Sequence record: NC_019401.1
Direction: 5' to 3' (one strand)
Length of the DNA: 64,000 nt
Positions 3,687 to 17,289 of this stretch are shown here, one piece after another. Both the position numbers and the translations under genes were made by a program. Each line of letters starts with the position of its first letter. Positions within the stretch are counted from its first letter, which is position 1. The notes beneath the pieces were generated by a model. It was not told where the DNA came from and did no database searches. It saw only the letters and a list, made by a program, of their open reading frames with translations.

Positions 3687-3724
3687 AAAATAAATTGGAT
3701 TGGTTCTACACATAAAAAATAATA

Positions 3725-3838
3725 GTGGAGTTCGTCTAGCGGCCCAGGACACGAAAAGCGATTCTTGACTAAGAATCTTACGGCATTTATAACTTTCATT
3801 TCACGAACGTAACATGGGTTCGAATCCCATACTCCACT
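3725..3838 (+). tRNA. tRNA-Glu(TTC) interrupted by a 41-nt insertion (3754-3794) at position 28/29
   Basis: GTGGAGT/ACTCCAC acceptor; Glu-type D arm; A26-C-G|insert|TTC-ATTTCAC-GAA-CG; T arm ATGGG-TTCGAAT-CCCAT. Confidence 0.85.
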
Positions 3839-3856
3839 CAAATTGAGGAAGGTACT

Positions 3857-4150
3857 ATGAAAAGTATTCTATTTTTCCAATACGCTGCCACTGGTGAAGG
3901 TTGGACAACAGAAATTCGTTTCTGTAATCAATCCAGAATTAGTGACGAACAAGCTATTGAAGAATTCAAACAGCGTCATCACGAGTACTTTCACTGTGGT
4001 ATAGAAATGCATAACATTGATGAAGCGAAGGAAGATAAACACTTCCTACAACATTTACAAGAACATGTACCTGCTTTACATCGTTATGTTTTGGGAAATC
4101 GTGATTGTTTAATTGATATTGACTACGTGCATTACGTCAATTTTTCATAA
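3857..4150 (+). CDS. hypothetical protein
   Basis: GAGG RBS; ORF track. Confidence 0.7.
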   Translation: MKSILFFQYAATGEGWTTEIRFCNQSRISDEQAIEEFKQRHHEYFHCGIEMHNIDEAKEDKHFLQHLQEHVPALHRYVLGNRDCLIDIDYVHYVNFS

Positions 4151-5562: not shown

Positions 5563-5796
5563 ATGTCAATTTTTTCTGAAATTAAAAATAGTTTTTTAAA
5601 TGCTGTTAAAACTGATGTTTCTTTCGTAGATCCAGCAATTGCACGTGAGCAATCATCTAAGTCAGTAAATCCTACTACTTATGATCGCTATCAGAAGTAT
5701 CATTTTACGTCTGGAGAAATGTCTAAAATGGACAAAGTACTTGGAAATTCCATTAATGCTGTAATTGATAATATTAAAAAGGGTATCATTAGCTGA
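5563..5796 (+). CDS. hypothetical protein
   Basis: The true start is probably ATG 5563 (AGGA RBS); the 5470 start lies inside the tRNA. Confidence 0.6.
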   Translation: MSIFSEIKNSFLNAVKTDVSFVDPAIAREQSSKSVNPTTYDRYQKYHFTSGEMSKMDKVLGNSINAVIDNIKKGIIS

Positions 5797-5997
5797 TTTC
5801 AGTTATATGGTGTGAAAAATTCGCGGGTAACGCTTGACAACTGCCAAACACCCCGCTATAATAGCTGGGTGAAAATATGAAATATTTTTATGAAATTTTA
5901 ATTACGATTACAATTATCCTTTCGATTGTTGCATTCGTATCTAAAAGCTATATAATCGCAAGCATAAGCATTATCTTTTTTATTGCTGGCTGCATAA

Positions 5998-6390
5998 TTG
6001 AATTCATTCTTAACCGGAATAATTAATATGAAAACCATCTTTGCCGTTTTATTTTTTGTCGCCGCTGTAGTTTCTGTTGTGTTTGGTCAGATCCCATTTG
6101 CAATTTTCGCAGCAATGTTTTTTGTTATTTTGTTGATGGCTCATAAATCGAAAGATACAAAAACATCAGAGGAACTTCTTGTAGAAGACAGTGGAATGAT
6201 TTTGGTAGAATATGCATTCTGCTCAAATGAAGATGAAAAATTCACTGCTGAAATTCCGCACAAAAGTACTGAATCTCTGACCGAAGAAAAAGTACTTTCA
6301 GAACTGGTTGAATATATCATTGAACGCACTGGTATTCCAACTGATAGTACACGATTGAAAGTACTTTGGTATCGTGAAGTTCATGCATAA
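5998..6390 (+). CDS. membrane-anchored hypothetical protein
   Basis: N-terminal hydrophobic hairpin. Confidence 0.7.
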   Translation: MNSFLTGIINMKTIFAVLFFVAAVVSVVFGQIPFAIFAAMFFVILLMAHKSKDTKTSEELLVEDSGMILVEYAFCSNEDEKFTAEIPHKSTESLTEEKVLSELVEYIIERTGIPTDSTRLKVLWYREVHA

Positions 6391-6641: not shown

Positions 6642-8375
6642 ATGAAAAAGATTCTGATAGCTGTGACGTTTTTGGGATTGTCAAGTACTTCGTTTGGGGC
6701 AACCAGTCCAAATGACTATAAAGTTTCATGTGATTCAGTTAATAGTCACGCAAGTCAGCAACAATGGTCACAAGTTGCTGCTGAATTACCACGTCTGACA
6801 AATGCGTTGGGGCGTACTCCAACTGAAACTGAAATGAAAGCCTGCGTTGGTAAATCAAATTGGGATGGTTGGCAAAATTCTTCAAGTTATGTACCTACTA
6901 CCCCTGGTGGTACAGTTTCAGTAAGTAAAGATGATTTCAAAAAAGATCAGGATCGCCAAGATGCAAATCTTGATAAAGAAACTCAAGATCGCCAAGATTC
7001 CGACCAGAAAATCGTTGATGACCAGAAAAATGTTGACGATGCTCAGAACGTAGAAATCGGCAAAAAGGCAGATCAATCAGCATTGGATCAAGAAGTTCAG
7101 GATCGTAAAGACGGAGATAAAGCCCTGTCTGATACGATTGATAAGAACAAATCTGAACAGGCAACCAAAGATGGAGAACAGGATCAAGCTATTACTGACC
7201 TTGATAAAAACAAAGTCAATAAAGATGATCAAAAAGCCGTTGATAATGCACAAAACGCCGCCATCGGTGAAAAAGCAAATCAATCAGATCTGGATAAAGA
7301 AGTAGCTAATCGTACTGATGGTGACAAAGCATTGTCCGACAGTATTCAAAAATCCAAAGATGATCAGGCTGCTATTGATGCCGCCCAAAACGTGGTAATT
7401 GATAGTAAGGCGAATCAAGCCGACCTGGAAAAAGAAGTAGCTGATCGTCAATCAGGTGATGATAAACTTCATAGTCAGATTGATCAAAATAACGCACGTG
7501 ATGATGCTCAAGATGTAGCCATAAATGGCAAAGTAGATAAATCTACCTATTCAGTTGATAAAGCTAAACAAGCTGTTCATGATGCTGTTCAGGATGCTGC
7601 GATTGTTGGTCTTGTGGTAACTAAAGCTGACAAAGCTGTTCTGGATAAAGAAGTAACTGCTCGCAAAGATGCGGATAAAGTACTGCAATCAAATATTGAT
7701 TCTGAAGCCCAAACTCGTGTTAACGCCGATATTGCGTTGAAGAACAATATTGATCAGAACAAAGCAGACCAGGCTAAAACTGACGCTAAACAAGATAAGG
7801 CTCTCAGTACTGAAACTGATAACCGTATCGCTGGAGATAATGCACTGAAAGCTAACATTGATAAAAACAAAGCTGACCAAGCCGTAACCGATTCTAATCA
7901 GGATAAGGTTATCACAACTAAAGCAAGTAAGATCGAACTGACAAGTGAAACTGCGTCCCGCAAATCTGCTGATGCGAAGTTGTCCAACCGAATCGATTCT
8001 AACGATGCTACGTTAGTCCAACATGACCAACGCATTACCAGCAATACTCAACGTATTGGTTCTGTAGAAGGTCGTGTATCCAATCTGGAACAAAGTACTA
8101 ACAAGCGTTTCTCTGATATGGACAAACGTATCGGTGATAACCGTAAAGTTGCAAGTGCAGGTATTGCTGGTGCTGGTGCAATGGCGAACATTCCCCAGGT
8201 ATCACAGGGAAGTACGTTCTCAGTCGGTGCTGGTGTCGGTGGGTATGATTCTGAACAAGCGGTTGCCGTAGGGTTTAGTGCACGTGTGAATAACAATGTC
8301 GTCACTAAAATGTCTGTAAGCACTAATACTCAGTCTGAAGTACTTTGGGGTGCAGGTGTTGGTGTAGAGTGGTAA
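6642..8375 (+). CDS. YadA-like trimeric autotransporter adhesin
   Basis: Signal peptide MKKILIAVTFLGLSSTSFGA; coiled-coil stalk with repeated ExxxRxxxDxxL; C-terminal anchor ASAGIAGAGAMANIPQ...GAGVGVEW. Confidence 0.9.
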   Translation: MKKILIAVTFLGLSSTSFGATSPNDYKVSCDSVNSHASQQQWSQVAAELPRLTNALGRTPTETEMKACVGKSNWDGWQNSSSYVPTTPGGTVSVSKDDFKKDQDRQDANLDKETQDRQDSDQKIVDDQKNVDDAQNVEIGKKADQSALDQEVQDRKDGDKALSDTIDKNKSEQATKDGEQDQAITDLDKNKVNKDDQKAVDNAQNAAIGEKANQSDLDKEVANRTDGDKALSDSIQKSKDDQAAIDAAQNVVIDSKANQADLEKEVADRQSGDDKLHSQIDQNNARDDAQDVAINGKVDKSTYSVDKAKQAVHDAVQDAAIVGLVVTKADKAVLDKEVTARKDADKVLQSNIDSEAQTRVNADIALKNNIDQNKADQAKTDAKQDKALSTETDNRIAGDNALKANIDKNKADQAVTDSNQDKVITTKASKIELTSETASRKSADAKLSNRIDSNDATLVQHDQRITSNTQRIGSVEGRVSNLEQSTNKRFSDMDKRIGDNRKVASAGIAGAGAMANIPQVSQGSTFSVGAGVGGYDSEQAVAVGFSARVNNNVVTKMSVSTNTQSEVLWGAGVGVEW

Positions 8376-10549: not shown

Positions 10550-10556
10550 AAATAAA

Positions 10557-10585
10557 TGAAACGATAAAAATTTTTGTGGTATAAT
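10557..10585 (+). promoter_or_regulatory. TGAAAC-N17-TATAAT promoter (RNA-gene class)
   Basis: TGAAAC 10557-62; TGTGG-TATAAT 10575-85. Confidence 0.75.
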
Positions 10586-10602: not shown

Positions 10603-10722
10603 GGAATCTTACAGCAAAAATAATTAATTTTTGATGAAAACAAAACGACGGCGGTTCGAATCCCCACCCACGATTTGCCTTATTTAAAGTGGGAGCATGG
10701 TGCTGGATAAACAAGAGATTCC
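10603..10722 (+). ncRNA. ACAGCAA element, permuted tRNA-like form
   Basis: GGAATCT/AGATTCC outer helix, ACAGCAA, T-loop GGTTCGAATCC, CCCAC/GTGGG acceptor-like helix. Confidence 0.75.
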
Positions 10723-10745: not shown

Positions 10746-11282
10746 ATGAACATATACAAAATTGCAAAAGAATTGATGAATAAGCACAATCTACAGGATT
10801 GGTCTTTCGAAATTTATGAAAGTTCAAATAAGCGTGTTCCTGGAACAACCAATACAATTGGAATGTGCATCTATCATGAAAAAGTTATCGCCATTTTAGA
10901 AGCGGTTGCTTATAGTCGTAGTGAAGAATATGTTCGTAGTTTAATATTGCATGAAATTGCACATGCATTAGCTGGTCATGAAAATGGTCATAATGAAGTA
11001 TGGCAGAAAATTGCAATAGAAATTGGTTCTAAACATATCACATCATGTGCAAACATGATTGAGTTTTTAAACCATAAAAATACAATCCGCAATTGTACTC
11101 ATCCGTATGTTTGGAAATTTATGAAGTATTTTTCAAATACTGATGAGTTAGTATTCAACTTAAACCGTATACACGGTAAAAGTACACAGTACTGGTATAA
11201 TGAATATCTAAGGATTTTAAAGTTTCAGGAACGTTTAAAAAAACGTAAAAAAATTGAAACGAATCAAAAATTTGTGGTATAA
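10746..11282 (+). CDS. SprT-like zinc metalloprotease
   Basis: LILHEIAHAL...GHNEVWQKIA (HExxH plus GH..W); start moved to ATG 10746. Confidence 0.8.
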   Translation: MNIYKIAKELMNKHNLQDWSFEIYESSNKRVPGTTNTIGMCIYHEKVIAILEAVAYSRSEEYVRSLILHEIAHALAGHENGHNEVWQKIAIEIGSKHITSCANMIEFLNHKNTIRNCTHPYVWKFMKYFSNTDELVFNLNRIHGKSTQYWYNEYLRILKFQERLKKRKKIETNQKFVV

Positions 11283-11283
11283 T
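11255..11283 (+). promoter_or_regulatory. TGAAAC-N17-TATAAT promoter (RNA-gene class)
   Basis: TGAAAC 11255-60; TGTGG-TATAAT to 11283. Confidence 0.75.
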
Positions 11284-11300: not shown

Positions 11301-11418
11301 GAAATCTTACAGCAAACAATATCTTATATTTTTTATGCGAAAAAAACGATGTGGTTCGAATCCACAACAACCATGTTGCTATGTTGGTTGTGCATGGGGC
11401 TAGAAAACAACAGATTTC
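11301..11418 (+). ncRNA. ACAGCAA element, permuted tRNA-like form
   Basis: GAAATCT/AGATTTC helix; ACAGCAA; TGTGG-TTCGAAT-CCACA; ACAACCA/TGGTTGT. Confidence 0.75.
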
Positions 11419-11771: not shown

Positions 11772-11878
11772 AAGAATCGCACAGCAAACATAAATCTTAT
11801 ATATTTCATTTGGCGAAAAACACCTTCGGTTCAATTCCGATTTACCACTGGTTGTGGGGATAGAAAAACACGATTCTT
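11772..11878 (+). ncRNA. ACAGCAA element with Gln-like anticodon arm and T arm (permuted)
   Basis: AAGAATCG/CGATTCTT; TTTC-ATTTGGC-GAAA; TCGG-TTCAATT-CCGA. Confidence 0.7.
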
Positions 11879-11905: not shown

Positions 11906-11985
11906 GAAGTGGGATTTAAACAGCAAACTAACCCTTTACTGAAAATCATATAGTAGATGGATTACTCGGAATTTCGATTCCCTTC
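11906..11985 (+). ncRNA. ACAGCAA element, degenerate
   Basis: GAAG(T)GGGA/TCCCTTC helix; ACAGCAA at 11920. Confidence 0.5.
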
Positions 11986-12106
11986 TTAATCATTACTCGC
12001 ACAGTATTAAAACAGTGTATTGTTTAAGTTCGTCAACTTATTCAATTATCCTTTTATTAAATCCCGTATAATAAAGTACTTAAATCCTATTGGACAGTAC
12101 TTTTAT

Positions 12107-12207: not shown

Positions 12208-12330
12208 GGGAAAGTAGCTCAGTTGGTAGAGCAGGTAAGAAAACCCAAATTACTGTATTGTAATTTCACAGCAACCATACTTCATCCACTTTTAATGGCC
12301 TGGTCGTTGGTTCAAATCCAACCTTTCCCA
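12208..12330 (+). tRNA. tRNA-Lys(TTT) interrupted by a 50-nt insertion (12236-12285) at position 28/29
   Basis: GGGAAAG/CTTTCCC; GCTC/GAGC; AGG|insert|CCA-CTTTTAA-TGG-CCT; GTTGG-TTCAAAT-CCAAC. Confidence 0.85.
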
Positions 12331-12333
12331 CAC

Positions 12334-12395
12334 AGAATCTAACAGCAAACCTTATTTTATCAAACTTTTACTTTGAAACCAAAATAATAGATTCT
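12334..12395 (+). ncRNA. minimal ACAGCAA element displaying a Lys(UUU) anticodon stem-loop
   Basis: AGAATCTA/TAGATTCT; CAAA-CTTTTAC-TTTG. Confidence 0.7.
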
Positions 12396-13850: not shown

Positions 13851-14045
13851 GTAGTACTGTGAAATTGTCCAACACAATAGGTAGCACTTTGGATGAATCA
13901 GTAAGCCTATATCGTACTACACCGAATATGTCTGACCACGGAAAAACGCCGATGACCGTGACAAAAAATATGAAGGGAACTTTATAAGTATTATCTACTA
14001 TCATTAAGTTGATGAAGGTATTATAAAGTGGCGTCCTTCCAGACA
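13851..14045 (+). ncRNA. candidate structured RNA (two domains, possible pseudoknot)
   Basis: GTAGTAC/GTACTAC, TCCAA/TTGGA, loop ATAGG with CCTAT; TGTCTG/CAGACA multibranch domain. Confidence 0.45.
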
Positions 14046-14053
14046 ACAAATTA

Positions 14054-14192
14054 AAGAATCTAACAGCAATTCAATTGTTAACTAAAAATAGCTGCCTCGC
14101 GGCATGTAGGTTCGAATCCTACGAACTATGTCAGTACTGAATAGTGATGGTGAAACAGGTAGACACGGCTATCAACACAAACATAGATTCTT
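14054..14192 (+). ncRNA. ACAGCAA element enclosing a circularly permuted tRNA-Leu-like sequence
   Basis: 3' half (ATAGC, variable arm, GTAGG-TTCGAAT-CCTAC) precedes 5' half (ATAGTGA-TG-GTG-AAACAGGTAGA-CAC-G-GCTAT). Confidence 0.8.
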
Positions 14193-14310
14193 GTATTAAT
14201 TAAATCTACAAGAGCATACGTATATTGATTCAATAAGCTATAGACTTTATACGATGGGTAGCAGATGGCTTATCATCTGTCGGTAGTTACGCTGCGGCTA
14301 CCAACAAATT

Positions 14311-14414
14311 TGGAATTCAACAGCAATTCATACTATCCCGCCGCATGTCGCAGTTTCGAGTCCTGCCTTCACTTCGGTATGGTAGATCAGCGGCCTAAAA
14401 AGAAATAAATTCCA
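14311..14414 (+). ncRNA. ACAGCAA element enclosing a degenerate permuted tRNA
   Basis: TGGAATT/AATTCCA; GCGGC/GCCGC anticodon stem; TTCG-capped acceptor remnant; paralogue of 15460-15580. Confidence 0.7.
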
Positions 14415-14428
14415 GTATTAATTAAAAA

Positions 14429-14466: not shown

Positions 14467-15066
14467 GTGGAAATGAAAAAGCTGATGGAAGATATTTCTG
14501 CCATCATGGAAGGACAAATGCCAGGATACTACTATCACGGCACTAAACAACCGATTCACACTTTTAGTGATGAATTTGTTGGAAAGGGTAATGACCAATA
14601 CGGTCCAGGAATTTACTTCACAAGTAATCCTAGTACTGCATTTGGTTATACTGATAAATCACCAAATGGTGTGGTTTATCAATGCACTCTGAATATTAGA
14701 AAAGAATTGTCCAAGAAACAAAGAATTAATAAAGCAGTACTTTTGAAGTTAATGAAAAGTACTCCAGACGATGAAGCATATACCAATTGGGGTGAACACC
14801 CAAACCGTGCATATCAAAATGCTTTAAATTCATATATGGATGCAGATGATAACATGTATGATGCATTAATGAATGTATGGTATGATTGGTATAGGTATCA
14901 CGGAACAGAATTTGTAAGAAAGCTTGTTGAATTGGGTTATGATGCTTTTACACATAAATTTGAAAGCGGTGAGTTATTTGTTATAGTATATAACCCTGCA
15001 AGTATTAATGTTGTTAAATCATATACTGTAGAACAAGCTAGAAATGAACTACTTCAATCTAAATAA
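14467..15066 (+). CDS. ADP-ribosyltransferase-fold protein (ART-PolyVal-like)
   Basis: YYHGT...G...GPGIYFTS..A..Y motif. Confidence 0.7.
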   Translation: MEMKKLMEDISAIMEGQMPGYYYHGTKQPIHTFSDEFVGKGNDQYGPGIYFTSNPSTAFGYTDKSPNGVVYQCTLNIRKELSKKQRINKAVLLKLMKSTPDDEAYTNWGEHPNRAYQNALNSYMDADDNMYDALMNVWYDWYRYHGTEFVRKLVELGYDAFTHKFESGELFVIVYNPASINVVKSYTVEQARNELLQSK

Positions 15067-15580: not shown

Positions 15581-15871
15581 GTTTTAATTTATATTGGAGA
15601 AAAATATGTCAAAAATTATTAAGTCTATTAAAAGTGATTTGGAAAAGATGGTATCTTTAGGATTAGCATCAACTGAAACGGTTAATAAAGTTATTCCAAT
15701 TTCTAATGTTTCTTCGAAGAAGAATTCTAAAAAGAAATAAATTCAAGTTTTAATCAAATTCACCAGTCGTACTATGGTTTGACACGGATAGCATGTTATC
15801 CTATTAAGGTCAGAATAGAATACGTATTAGTTCCTTGGTCGGAACTTATGTAAACTCAATTTGTACTAATT

Positions 15872-15925
15872 TAGAATCTAACAGCAATTAAAACTTCTCG
15901 GATATAGAAAAAACAATAGATTCTA
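15872..15925 (+). ncRNA. minimal ACAGCAA element
   Basis: TAGAATCTA/TAGATTCTA; TTCT-CGGATAT-AGAA hairpin. Confidence 0.7.
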
Positions 15926-15951
15926 GCTTTGATTAAACTAAAAGGTTTGAT

Positions 15952-16198: not shown

Positions 16199-16262
16199 GG
16201 AATCTAACAGCAACCATATATTGAACTCAACTGTTAATTGAAAACCTCAAAAAATGGATTCC
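16199..16262 (+). ncRNA. minimal ACAGCAA element displaying an Asn(GUU) anticodon stem-loop
   Basis: GGAATCTA/TGGATTCC; TCAA-CTGTTAA-TTGA. Confidence 0.75.
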
Positions 16263-16401: not shown

Positions 16402-16465
16402 AAGAATCTTGCAGCAAACATATTAAACATATTTTTTGGGTAAATAAACGTTAAAACGGATTCTT
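16402..16465 (+). ncRNA. minimal GCAGCAA element displaying a Pro(UGG) anticodon stem-loop
   Basis: AAGAATCT/GGATTCTT; ATTT-TTTGGGT-AAAT. Confidence 0.7.
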
Positions 16466-17201: not shown

Positions 17202-17208
17202 CAGAATT

Positions 17209-17264
17209 TAGAATCTAACAGCAATTAAAACTCATTTGGATAATATGAAAAACAATAGATTCTA
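17209..17264 (+). ncRNA. minimal ACAGCAA element (near-copy of 15872-15925)
   Basis: TAGAATCTAACAGCAATTAAAACT...GAAAAACAATAGATTCTAG. Confidence 0.7.
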
Positions 17265-17289
17265 GTACTTTTTTAGCTAAGAGACAAAT

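What the first reader, a model, noticed from the sequence alone, without database searches (positions are those of the whole stretch)
14054..14192. Circularly permuted tRNA-Leu-like gene
SEEN: inside the ACAGCAA helix the order is anticodon 3' side (...TAAAA-ATAGC), a Leu-type variable arm (TGC-CTCGC-GGCA), T arm, acceptor 3' strand GAACTAT, an 11-nt linker containing the palindrome TCAGTACTGA, acceptor 5' strand ATAGTGA, a Leu-type D arm GTG-AAACAGGTAGA-CAC and GCTAT. GCTAT/ATAGC re-forms the anticodon stem. The acceptor has two mismatches and position 33 is uncertain. To my knowledge permuted tRNA genes are not described in phages (inference, not searched).
Basis: partly seen in the sequence, partly recalled or inferred. 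Interest (0 to 1): 0.8.

Follow-up and report, generated by a model that had tools for sequence, protein, structure and literature searches.

The report
Phage Y-RNA-like tRNA-Leu mimic
The "permuted tRNA-Leu" is a real, conserved phage RNA, but it is most likely a Y-RNA-like tRNA mimic, one of about 15 related small RNAs that probably partner with the phage's Ro60-like protein, and not a gene for a decoding tRNA.

Summary
The window is the last 64 kb of Cronobacter jumbo phage GAP32. When the two halves are swapped back in silico, ARAGORN calls tRNA-Leu(taa). Orthologs in four phage lineages keep all six helices: about 90% of pair cells are paired against about 38% in slid controls, and 16 of 33 pairs show compensatory changes. 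So this is a selected, structured RNA.

It does not look like a decoding tRNA:
- The anticodon-loop register and sequence drift between orthologs.
- Position 33 is C.
- The discriminator position is never A.
- The acceptor is closed by a hairpin.

The topology (end stem, V arm, T arm, closed acceptor, D arm) is that of YrlA Y RNAs. A paralog at 15459-15581 hits Rfam YrlA at E about 1e-7.

The element is one of 12 permuted or short paralogs, plus two unpermuted ones. All share a covarying end stem followed by the motif ACAGCAA. GAP32 encodes a DUF2828 protein (GAP32_176) next to an RNA ligase, and its model matches Ro60/Rsr. The same ACAGCAA stem module lies beside DUF2828 genes in phages of Mycobacterium, Listeria, Staphylococcus, Bacillus, Campylobacter and E. 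coli, and in 41 of 69 uncultivated viral contigs. Binding and expression are untested.

Verdict: a new variant of a known kind.

The parts
14054..14192 (+). e2, the finding: whole Y-RNA-like element with a permuted tRNA-Leu-like domain (139 nt)
   Evidence: Sequence. CM R1 scores it 137 bits and its orthologs 109-139 bits. Covariation.
14054..14062 (+). 5' arm of the closing helix (AAGAATCTA); pairs with 14184-14192
   Evidence: 97.8% paired in orthologs, with 6 of 9 pairs compensatory. Family-wide: 93% paired, with all 9 pairs compensatory.
14063..14069 (+). ACAGCAA motif directly after the 5' arm; proposed recognition site for the Ro60-like protein
   Evidence: CAGCA is invariant in the orthologs. 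The motif is present in all 12 window paralogs. The same motif with a stem lies beside DUF2828 genes in unrelated phages.
14088..14092 (+). ATAGC, equivalent to the 3' strand of a tRNA anticodon stem; pairs with GCTAT 14168-14172
   Evidence: 96% paired. Becomes ACAGC/GCTGT in the Yersinia/Serratia phages.
14093..14104 (+). Variable-arm hairpin (the V stem-loop of YrlA)
   Evidence: GCC/GGC against ACC/GGT, five sequences each.
14106..14122 (+). T arm GTAGG-TTCGAAT-CCTAC
   Evidence: Partial Rfam tRNA match at 14105-14122. 100% paired, with 2 pairs compensatory.
14123..14147 (+). Closed acceptor-like hairpin: 3' strand GAACTAT, 11-nt linker (itself a small hairpin), 5' strand ATAGTGA
   Evidence: 6 of 7 pairs show compensatory changes. 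The sequence is wholly different in the Yersinia phage and in the two distant contigs, yet it still pairs, with G-U pairs.
14150..14166 (+). Leu-type D arm GTG-AAACAGGTAGA-CAC
   Evidence: Invariant stem. The same 23-nt pattern also hits genuine tRNA-Leu genes in viral contigs.
14168..14172 (+). GCTAT, equivalent to the 5' strand of the anticodon stem
14184..14192 (+). 3' arm of the closing helix (TAGATTCTT), followed by GTATTAATT
14310..14415 (+). e3: paralog with a degenerate permuted tRNA-like core (stem GGAATT/AATTCC)
   Evidence: R1 36 bits
15459..15581 (+). e4: paralog with a clean permuted tRNA-like core (T arm, 7-bp acceptor closed by TTCG, D arm)
   Evidence: Rfam YrlA RF02553: 44.7 bits, E 1.1e-7 to 2.6e-9, full-length model. 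R1 57.6 bits.
10603..10722 (+). eA: paralog with a T arm, a hairpin and a D-like arm; a sigma-70-like promoter lies at 10556-10585
11301..11418 (+). eB: paralog with a T arm and a 7-bp closed acceptor; promoter-like site at 11254-11283
11772..11878 (+). eC: paralog with a T-arm-like core, directly after tRNA-Tyr
11910..12066 (+). eD: longer paralog (stem GGGATTTAA/TTAAATCCC)
12334..12395 (+). e1: short paralog with no tRNA part
15871..15926 (+). e5: short paralog
16199..16262 (+). e6: short paralog; its stem has a G-U pair
16402..16465 (+). eE: short paralog between tRNA-Asn and tRNA-Gln
17208..17265 (+). e7: short paralog
12208..12330 (+). tRNAx: the unpermuted sibling. Normal open acceptor, D and T arms, but the anticodon region carries the same module closed by a loop (AAATTAC-TGTAT-GTAATTT, then CACAGCAA).
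   Evidence: Rfam tRNA 49.5 bits; ARAGORN silent. Ortholog alignment A6 shows the hairpin covarying and the Lys-like loop not kept in CBB.
3724..3839 (+). Second unpermuted sibling: acceptor AGTGGAG/CTCCACT, D arm, hairpin GATTCTT-GACT-AAGAATC followed by TTACGGCA, then a T arm
   Evidence: R1 weak hit at 3771-3871; sequence read.

Best explanation
The element is a non-coding RNA of the Y-RNA-like (YrlA) class.

Shown:
- It sits on the + strand of the phage's tRNA/early region.
- It can fold so that its 5' and 3' ends form a 9-bp stem.
- That stem is followed by the conserved single-stranded motif ACAGCAA and an A-rich 3' strand.
- The interior folds into a tRNA-Leu-shaped body: V arm, T arm, acceptor stem closed by a hairpin, and D arm. 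The nucleotides needed for the L-shape are present (U8, A14, A15/U48, G18G19, T54-C56).
- Where a tRNA would have its anticodon loop, this RNA has the end-stem module.
- The same stem module sits next to DUF2828 genes across many phage lineages.

Inferred:
- The stem plus ACAGCAA module is the docking site for the phage's Ro60-like protein, GAP32_176. This protein has DUF2828 and vWA domains, is encoded next to an RNA ligase, and lies about 200 kb away.
- The tRNA-shaped body is the effector module. It presents a tRNA-like surface to tRNA-handling enzymes (repair ligase, kinase/phosphatase, CCA enzyme, host nucleases or PNPase) or gates the Ro ring, as proposed for bacterial Ro60-Y RNA particles.
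- It does not decode.
- It may be cut at the acceptor loop by RNase P, as M. smegmatis YrlA is.
For: Structure is under selection. The order V-T-acceptor hairpin-D between end strands is the published YrlA architecture.

Paralog e4 matches Rfam YrlA full length at E 1e-7 to 3e-9. CM R1, built from e2 orthologs, finds e4-type, e3 and the short elements as one family. The family-wide closing helix is 93% paired, with all 9 pairs compensatory.

GAP32_176 has DUF2828 and DUF7788 domains and a weak VWA match. Its AF2 model has pLDDT 87.8. The top three Foldseek PDB hits are a TROVE domain, Xenopus Ro60 and D. radiodurans Rsr, at E 7e-8 to 5e-6 over the full length. Homologs in mycobacteriophages are annotated as Ro-like. 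Its upstream neighbour is an RNA ligase.

The identical module (arm, then [ACU]ACAGCAA, then an A-rich stretch, then the complementary arm) lies directly beside the DUF2828 gene in:
- Mycobacterium phage Snenia, where one copy is also an Rfam YrlA hit at 39 bits
- E. coli phage Alf5
- Listeria phage LMTA-57
- Campylobacter phage CPX
- Bacillus phage FADO
- Staphylococcus phage S-CoN_Ph10

In 69 IMG/VR loci there are 105 co-oriented modules against 31 on the opposite strand. 53 fall in the 500 nt just upstream of the gene and 17 just past its end, against 1-8 in other bins.

The 18 phage records that share the e2 region by blastn equal in number the 18 records whose DUF2828 protein is at least 60% identical.
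Against: - e2 itself gets no Rfam YrlA hit, and e4 is below the gathering score (44.7 against 69).
- The published Ro60 motif GNCGAAN0-1G is absent; the phage motif is ACAGCAA.
- In GAP32 the RNAs are about 200 kb from the Ro-like gene, whereas published YrlA genes lie within 4 kb of it.
- There are no expression, end-mapping or binding data.
- Genomic linkage to DUF2828 could reflect co-regulation or a shared processing signal instead of binding.
- Record positions 150-294 kb of GAP32 were not inspected.
Confidence: 0.7

Rival explanations
1. A true circularly permuted tRNA-Leu gene. The transcript's ends are joined, for example by the phage's RNA ligases. RNase P and 3' processing then open the acceptor, CCA is added, and a decoding tRNA-Leu(UAA) results.
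For: The swapped halves are called tRNA-Leu(taa) by ARAGORN. The phage encodes RnlA, a second RNA ligase, a polynucleotide kinase/phosphatase and a CCA-adding enzyme.
Against: - The anticodon-loop sequence and register are not conserved. The implied anticodons are UAA, AAA and CCC.
- Position 33 is C.
- The discriminator position is G or T, never A73, which is the main LeuRS determinant in E. coli (my own knowledge). The phage's two canonical tRNA-Leu genes have A73 and CCA.
- The acceptor has two mismatches in GAP32, and is extended and closed by a UUCG loop or a 3-bp extension in other lineages.
- No bulge-helix-bulge junction is visible.
- The same module occurs in paralogs that have no tRNA part.
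Confidence: 0.05
2. Decayed remains of two adjacent tRNA genes (the 3' half of one and the 5' half of the next) with no function of their own. This is the 'dimeric tRNA' artefact known to mimic YrlA.
For: The D arm cannot be told apart from that of real tRNA-Leu genes. Chen et al. warn about such false positives.
Against: Compensatory changes occur in the closing helix, the anticodon-like stem, the V arm and the acceptor across four lineages. The acceptor linker is a closed hairpin, not a spacer between genes. The GCTAT/ATAGC pairing across the whole element is maintained, becoming ACAGC/GCTGT.
Confidence: 0.03
3. The shared stem plus ACAGCAA module is an intergenic RNA-processing or termination signal of the tRNA/early operons, or a DNA-level inverted-repeat element. 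On this view the tRNA-like inserts are incidental cargo.
For: The elements sit in intergenic gaps just after stop codons and are followed by U-rich sequence. The short members have little internal structure.
Against: - All copies are on the transcribed strand.
- G-U pairs occur in the stems, so pairing is at the RNA level, not the DNA level.
- The module is conserved in phages of Actinobacteria, Firmicutes and Proteobacteria, whose hosts have different termination and processing machinery. There it tracks one phage gene, DUF2828, in position and orientation.
- eA and eB have their own promoter-like sites.
- None of these elements is among the 10 terminator-like sites the scan lists.
Confidence: 0.1
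4. A two-piece tRNA-like RNA. RNase P cuts in the acceptor linker and CCA is added, as shown for M. smegmatis YrlA. This leaves two strands held together by the end stem and the acceptor, possibly aminoacylated. This reading is compatible with the Y-RNA reading.
For: There is a precedent in Chen et al.. A 7-bp acceptor stacked on the T stem is present in the distant ortholog L010 and in the Yersinia/Serratia phages. The phage encodes a CCA enzyme.
Against: In GAP32 the two acceptor pairs next to the T stem are mismatched. No A73 is present. Cleavage is untested.
Confidence: 0.12

Closest known systems
YrlA, bacterial and mycobacteriophage Y-RNA-like tRNA mimics (Chen et al. 2014, PMC4201824; Rfam RF02553)
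   Same: The 5' and 3' ends form a stem with a conserved motif near the 5' end. The interior runs V stem-loop, T arm, acceptor-like stem-loop and D arm, in that order. The T and D arms are nearly invariant and the acceptor and V arms covary. The genome encodes a protein with the Ro60 fold. Shorter partner RNAs without the full tRNA part exist, like YrlB.
   Different: - The motif is ACAGCAA, not GNCGAAN0-1G.
- The tRNA body is class II (Leu-type long D loop and variable arm), so the Rfam model misses it.
- The partner is the divergent DUF2828 branch, not a Pfam TROVE protein.
- About 14 copies are scattered through a tRNA cluster about 200 kb from the protein gene, in place of 1-2 copies within 4 kb of it.
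- Unpermuted siblings exist.
Circularly permuted tRNA genes of the red alga Cyanidioschyzon merolae and some archaea (Soma et al. 2007; from my own knowledge)
   Same: The 3' half lies upstream of the 5' half, and the acceptor ends are joined by a short linker.
   Different: Those genes have a bulge-helix-bulge junction cut by the splicing endonuclease, a circular intermediate, an intact conserved anticodon loop, and a decoding product. None of these is seen or conserved here, and enterobacteria lack that endonuclease.
Two-piece (permuted) tmRNA of alpha-proteobacteria and cyanobacteria
   Same: A permuted gene order for a tRNA-like domain, with function as a non-canonical tRNA-like RNA.
   Different: ARAGORN reports no tmRNA. 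There is no Rfam tmRNA or tmRNA_permuted hit at E up to 10.
D. radiodurans Yrn1 / metazoan Y RNAs with Ro60
   Same: An end stem bound by Ro60, plus a second module that recruits or regulates other factors (PNPase in Deinococcus).
   Different: Different stem motif. In Yrn1 the T-like and D-like arms have the opposite orientation relative to the ends. That resembles the unpermuted siblings at 12208-12330 and 3724-3839 more than it resembles e2.

Membership tests
YrlA / Y-RNA-like (RF02553) | Order is end stem, V, T arm, closed acceptor-like stem-loop, D arm, end stem | tested here: met
   Sequence. Pair counts on orthologs: 90.8% paired, 16 of 33 pairs compensatory.
YrlA / Y-RNA-like (RF02553) | Reaches the Rfam gathering score of the YrlA model | tested here: not met
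   e2 has no hit at E up to 10. Paralog e4 scores 44.7 bits against a gathering score of 69, at E 1e-7.
YrlA / Y-RNA-like (RF02553) | GNCGAAN0-1G motif near the 5' end (the proposed Ro60 contact) | tested here: not met
   The motif is ACAGCAA in all paralogs and orthologs. It shares only the GCAA/CGAA-like core.
YrlA / Y-RNA-like (RF02553) | Genome encodes a Ro60 ortholog | tested here: met
   At the fold level, GAP32_176 (DUF2828 + vWA): the top Foldseek hits are a TROVE domain, Ro60 and Rsr, at E 7e-8 to 5e-6. There is no Pfam TROVE sequence match and no phmmer hit to the PDB.
YrlA / Y-RNA-like (RF02553) | Encoded within about 4 kb of the Ro60 gene and on the same strand | tested here: not met
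   In GAP32 the RNAs are at record positions of about 298-312 kb and the gene is at 105.9-107.5 kb. The same module is adjacent and co-oriented in 6 other phages and in 41 of 69 viral contigs.
YrlA / Y-RNA-like (RF02553) | Bound by Ro60/Rsr; carries pseudouridine 55 and dihydrouridine | not testable with these tools
   Needs RNA immunoprecipitation and modification mapping.
Circularly permuted tRNA gene | 3' half upstream of 5' half, with acceptor ends joined by a linker | tested here: met
Circularly permuted tRNA gene | Bulge-helix-bulge junction flanking the halves | tested here: not met
   By inspection of the supported structure only: a 9-bp end stem is separated from the anticodon-like stem by a 25-nt and an 11-nt single-stranded stretch. 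There are no paired 3-nt bulges 4 bp apart. No dedicated BHB search tool was available.
Circularly permuted tRNA gene | Rejoined product has a conserved 7-nt anticodon loop with U33 and a fixed anticodon | tested here: not met
   The loop region differs in sequence and length between orthologs, and position 33 is C in GAP32.
Circularly permuted tRNA gene | Identity elements of the cognate synthetase (A73 for Leu) | tested here: not met
   G or T follows the acceptor 3' strand in all six ortholog types. The phage's real tRNA-Leu genes have A73.
Circularly permuted tRNA gene | Circular intermediate and mature linear CCA-ended tRNA | not testable with these tools
   Needs RT-PCR or small-RNA sequencing.
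Two-piece (permuted) tmRNA | Alanine-type acceptor, tag reading frame, pseudoknots | tested here: not met
   ARAGORN reports no tmRNA. No Rfam tmRNA or tmRNA_permuted hit.

The most novel reading that the evidence does not exclude
The phage makes a panel of anticodon-less mimics of particular tRNA bodies: Leu-type e2, Lys/Asn-type e4 and tRNAx, and a Glu/Asp-type copy at 3724-3839. Each is mounted on a Ro60-like/DUF2828 particle through the ACAGCAA stem. These particles would act in the tRNA war with the host. Either they soak up host tRNA-targeting defence nucleases as uncleavable decoys, or they guide the neighbouring RNA ligase and kinase to broken tRNAs of matching shape. The ACAGCAA-stem/DUF2828 pair would then be a widespread, so far undescribed phage RNP found from mycobacteriophages to jumbo phages.
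Probability: 0.12. Interest if true: 0.85.

Novelty: new variant of a known kind. Interest (0 to 1): 0.6.

Why it matters
- It explains a striking 'permuted tRNA' without invoking a new tRNA maturation pathway.
- It shows that jumbo-phage tRNA clusters hide a multi-copy family of Y-RNA-like RNAs. Some of them are currently annotated as 119-122-nt tRNA-Lys or tRNA-Ser genes.
- It gives the large DUF2828 protein family (710 phage records) a candidate RNA partner with a simple, searchable signature: a covarying stem followed by ACAGCAA.
- If binding is confirmed, phages become a tractable system for asking what the tRNA-like module of Ro60-Y RNA particles does. That question is still open for bacterial YrlA.

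Tried and rejected
- Rfam on e2 itself found only the T arm and no YrlA hit.
- phmmer of GAP32_176 against PDB sequences found nothing; the link to Ro60 needed a structure model.
- An exact 15-mer scan of viral contigs with GGAATTCAACAGCAA returned 118 stretches. Of the 78 new loci checked, all but GAP32 itself and one doubtful case were chance matches without a 3' arm.
- The highly expressed ncRNA001 and ncRNA002 of the related phage PA5oct were checked as possible expression evidence. They do not contain the module.
- GAP32 record positions 1-150 kb contain no convincing module. There are 17 hits with arms of at least 7 nt over both strands, none with the family's stem sequence.
- Literature searches for DUF2828, Ro-like with Y RNA and phage, and permuted tRNA with phage found no prior description. 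The supplement of Chen et al. and the 2020 Ro60 review are not held, so I cannot say which 22 phages were already listed there.
- The small hairpin that the MFE fold draws with ACAGCAA in GAP32 is not kept in the Yersinia phages, so I do not count it as part of the structure.

Full report
**Identity and context.** The window is identical to the last 64 kb of Cronobacter phage vB_CsaM_GAP32 (JN882285; window position = record position minus 294,663). The region holds 18 ARAGORN tRNAs and 19 Rfam tRNA hits. The finding lies in a 620-nt unannotated gap between tRNA-Ile and GAP32_436.

**The observation.** Native e2 is invisible to ARAGORN. When the 5' half, the seven bases ACTAAAA and the 3' half are put in tRNA order in silico, ARAGORN calls tRNA-Leu(taa), 85 nt. 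That call has two mismatches at the base of the acceptor and A32-C33. The nucleotides used for tRNA tertiary folding (U8, A14, A15/U48, G18G19, T54-C56) can be read directly from the sequence. The 23-nt D-arm pattern also hits genuine tRNA-Leu genes in viral contigs. So the body is Leu-type.

**Conservation.** Orthologs occur at the same position in:
- Pectobacterium phage CBB, Xanthomonas phage XbC2 and Erwinia phage Kaldavass
- Yersinia phages fHe-Yen9-03 and fHe-Yen9-04, and Serratia phage BF
- several uncultivated contigs, including two distant ones of 241,681 bp and 412,435 bp

On a plain MAFFT alignment with the structure I named, 89.5% of pair cells are standard pairs, against 36-41% when partners are slid. 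16 of 33 pairs change on both sides, and no shuffle out of 500 reaches these values. A model-fitted alignment gives 90.8%. By helix: closing helix 97.8% paired, anticodon-like stem 96% (ATAGC/GCTAT becomes ACAGC/GCTGT), T arm 100%, D arm invariant. The acceptor has 6 of 7 pairs with compensatory changes. RNAalifold on its own recovers the closing helix and the V, T and D arms. This is a selected RNA structure.

**Why it is not a decoding tRNA.**
- The seven bases that would be the anticodon loop differ between orthologs in sequence and register: ACTAAAA, CTAAAAA, AACCCAA.
- The base after the acceptor 3' strand is G or T, never A. Both canonical phage tRNA-Leu genes have A73 and CCA.
- The acceptor is closed by a small hairpin in GAP32, by a UUCG tetraloop in the Yersinia/Serratia phages, and by a 3-bp extension in a distant contig.
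- No bulge-helix-bulge junction is visible in the supported structure.

**A family.** A search for a stem followed by CAGCAA finds 12 elements, all on the + strand between 10.6 and 17.3 kb. They share three features: a covarying end stem (for example GGAATCTT/GAGATTCC, AAGAATCG/CGATTCTT, GGAATT/AATTCC), ACAGCAA right after the 5' arm, and an A-rich stretch before the 3' arm.
- Six carry a T arm, a closed acceptor-like hairpin and a D-like arm in the permuted order.
- One (eD) is longer, with no tRNA-like core noted.
- Five are only 56-64 nt.

The model built from e2 orthologs recovers them all, and their orthologs in related phages. Across 73 distinct sequences the closing helix is 93% paired, with compensatory changes at all nine pairs. 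That alignment is fitted to the model.

Two further RNAs have the same module in unpermuted form: tRNAx at 12208-12330 and a second at about 3724-3839. They have an open acceptor and D and T arms, but a hairpin followed by CACAGCAA or TTACGGCA where the anticodon arm should be. Opening that hairpin's loop and closing the acceptor gives exactly the e4/e2 topology. Orthologs of tRNAx are annotated as tRNA-Ser(AGA) in CBB and tRNA-Lys(TTT) in XbC2 and Kaldavass. However, the Lys-like loop is not conserved in CBB.

**What kind of RNA.** Paralog e4 matches Rfam YrlA over the whole model: 44.7 bits, E 1.1e-7 in a 6.5-kb search and 2.6e-9 locally. This is below the gathering score of 69. YrlA RNAs are Ro60-associated tRNA mimics with precisely this order of elements. 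M. smegmatis YrlA, which has a 7-bp acceptor, is cut by RNase P and receives CCA. Chen et al. reported them in 254 bacteria and 22 phages, always within 4 kb of a TROVE gene, and discarded anything overlapping tandem tRNAs.

**The protein partner.** GAP32_176 (record 105,937-107,451; 504 aa) carries DUF2828 and DUF7788 and a weak VWA match. RefSeq names it 'RNA-binding protein'. An AlphaFold model from 35 homologs has pLDDT 87.8. Its three best PDB matches are a TROVE domain (9kop), Xenopus Ro60 (1yvr, TM 0.58) and D. radiodurans Rsr (2nvo), at E 7e-8 to 5e-6 over the full length. All later hits match only the vWA domain. The gene upstream, GAP32_175, is an RNA ligase. The phage also encodes RnlA, PseT, a CCA-adding enzyme and a Thg1-like protein.

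**Linking RNA and protein.** tblastn finds DUF2828 homologs in 710 phage records. In mycobacteriophages they are annotated as Ro-like. Around these genes I find the same module:

| Phage | Modules and position |
|---|---|
| Mycobacterium phage Snenia | three copies directly downstream; the middle one is an Rfam YrlA hit at 39.3 bits |
| E. coli phage Alf5 | four copies in the tRNA cluster just downstream |
| Listeria phage LMTA-57 | three copies just upstream |
| Campylobacter phage CPX | two copies just upstream |
| Bacillus phage FADO | three copies upstream |
| Staphylococcus phage S-CoN_Ph10 | three copies just downstream |

Aeromonas phage phiAS5 instead has two 118-nt unpermuted tRNA-like RNAs with a hairpin followed by CGGCAAC.

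In 69 uncultivated viral loci whose DUF2828 protein is 41-47% identical to GAP32_176, there are 105 modules on the gene's strand and 31 on the other strand. 53 fall in the 500 nt before the start codon and 17 just past the stop, against 1-8 in every other 500-nt bin. 41 of the 69 loci have at least one module within 700 nt upstream. This positional and strand linkage across Actinobacteria, Firmicutes and Proteobacteria phages is the main reason I infer that the stem plus ACAGCAA module is the Ro-like protein's RNA site.

**Mechanism.**
- Shown: a conserved RNA structure with a tRNA-Leu-shaped core and an end-stem module; a family of paralogs; a Ro60-fold protein in the genome; genomic linkage of the module and the protein family.
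- Inferred: the protein binds the stem/ACAGCAA module, and the tRNA-like core recruits or regulates tRNA-handling factors or gates the Ro ring, as in the bacterial Ro60-Y RNA models.
- Possible: RNase P cleavage in the acceptor loop.

Promoter-like sites sit directly upstream of eA and eB. e2 has none of comparable quality and is probably co-transcribed with tRNA-Ile.

**Caveats.**
- There are no expression or binding data.
- e2 fails the Rfam YrlA model.
- The motif differs from the published Ro60 motif.
- In GAP32 the RNAs are remote from the protein gene.
- Record positions 150-294 kb were not examined.
- I could not see which phages Chen et al. listed in their supplement.

**Verdict.** The element is best filed as a new variant of the Y-RNA-like (YrlA) kind: a class II tRNA mimic on an ACAGCAA stem, tied to DUF2828 Ro-like proteins.

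Noticed in passing
window 12208-12330: A 123-nt RNA that Rfam scores as tRNA (49.5 bits) and ARAGORN misses. Its orthologs are annotated as tRNA-Ser(AGA) in CBB and tRNA-Lys(TTT) in XbC2 and Kaldavass. It has a hairpin followed by CACAGCAA in place of an anticodon arm, so these tRNA annotations are probably wrong.
   Followed up: partly
window 3724-3839: A second unannotated, unpermuted tRNA-like RNA with the hairpin GATTCTT-GACT-AAGAATC followed by TTACGGCA. It was found only as a weak hit of the e2 model.
   Followed up: partly
window 14467-15066 (GAP32_436): The 'hypothetical protein' just downstream of e3 matches Pfam ART-PolyVal, an ADP-ribosyltransferase of polyvalent proteins, at E 2.9e-11.
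   Followed up: no
window 13890-13925 and the equivalent flanks in L006, L007, L014, L018: A block reading GGATGAATCAGTAAGCCTATA..GTACTAC between tRNA-Ile and e2 is conserved across Mimasvirus and Eneladusvirus phages. It may be another small RNA or a signal.
   Followed up: no
window 10556-10585 and 11254-11283: Sigma-70-like promoters with an extended -10 (ATGAAA or TTGAAA, 18 nt, TATAAT) sit 15-20 nt upstream of elements eA and eB. This suggests that these two are primary transcripts.
   Followed up: no
L024:1413-1964 (Listeria phage LMTA-57): A ROOL RNA hit (88.5 bits, just under the gathering score) lies about 1 kb upstream of the DUF2828 gene. An RtcB-type 'tRNA-splicing ligase' lies 1.3 kb downstream of the gene.
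   Followed up: no
L023:6709-6826, about 6840-6960, and 6977-7094 (Aeromonas phage phiAS5): There are unannotated 118-nt 'tRNA' hits 2.3-2.6 kb downstream of the DUF2828 gene. 6977-7094 and a neighbouring copy at about 6840-6960 have a hairpin followed by CGGCAAC or CCGCAAC in the anticodon region, like tRNAx. The hit at 6709-6826 instead carries an extra T-arm-like hairpin.
   Followed up: partly
L022:4943-5016, 5768-5841, 6170-6248 (E. coli phage Alf5): Rfam tRNA hits that are not annotated in the record, interleaved with ACAGCAA modules in the tRNA cluster next to the DUF2828 gene.
   Followed up: no
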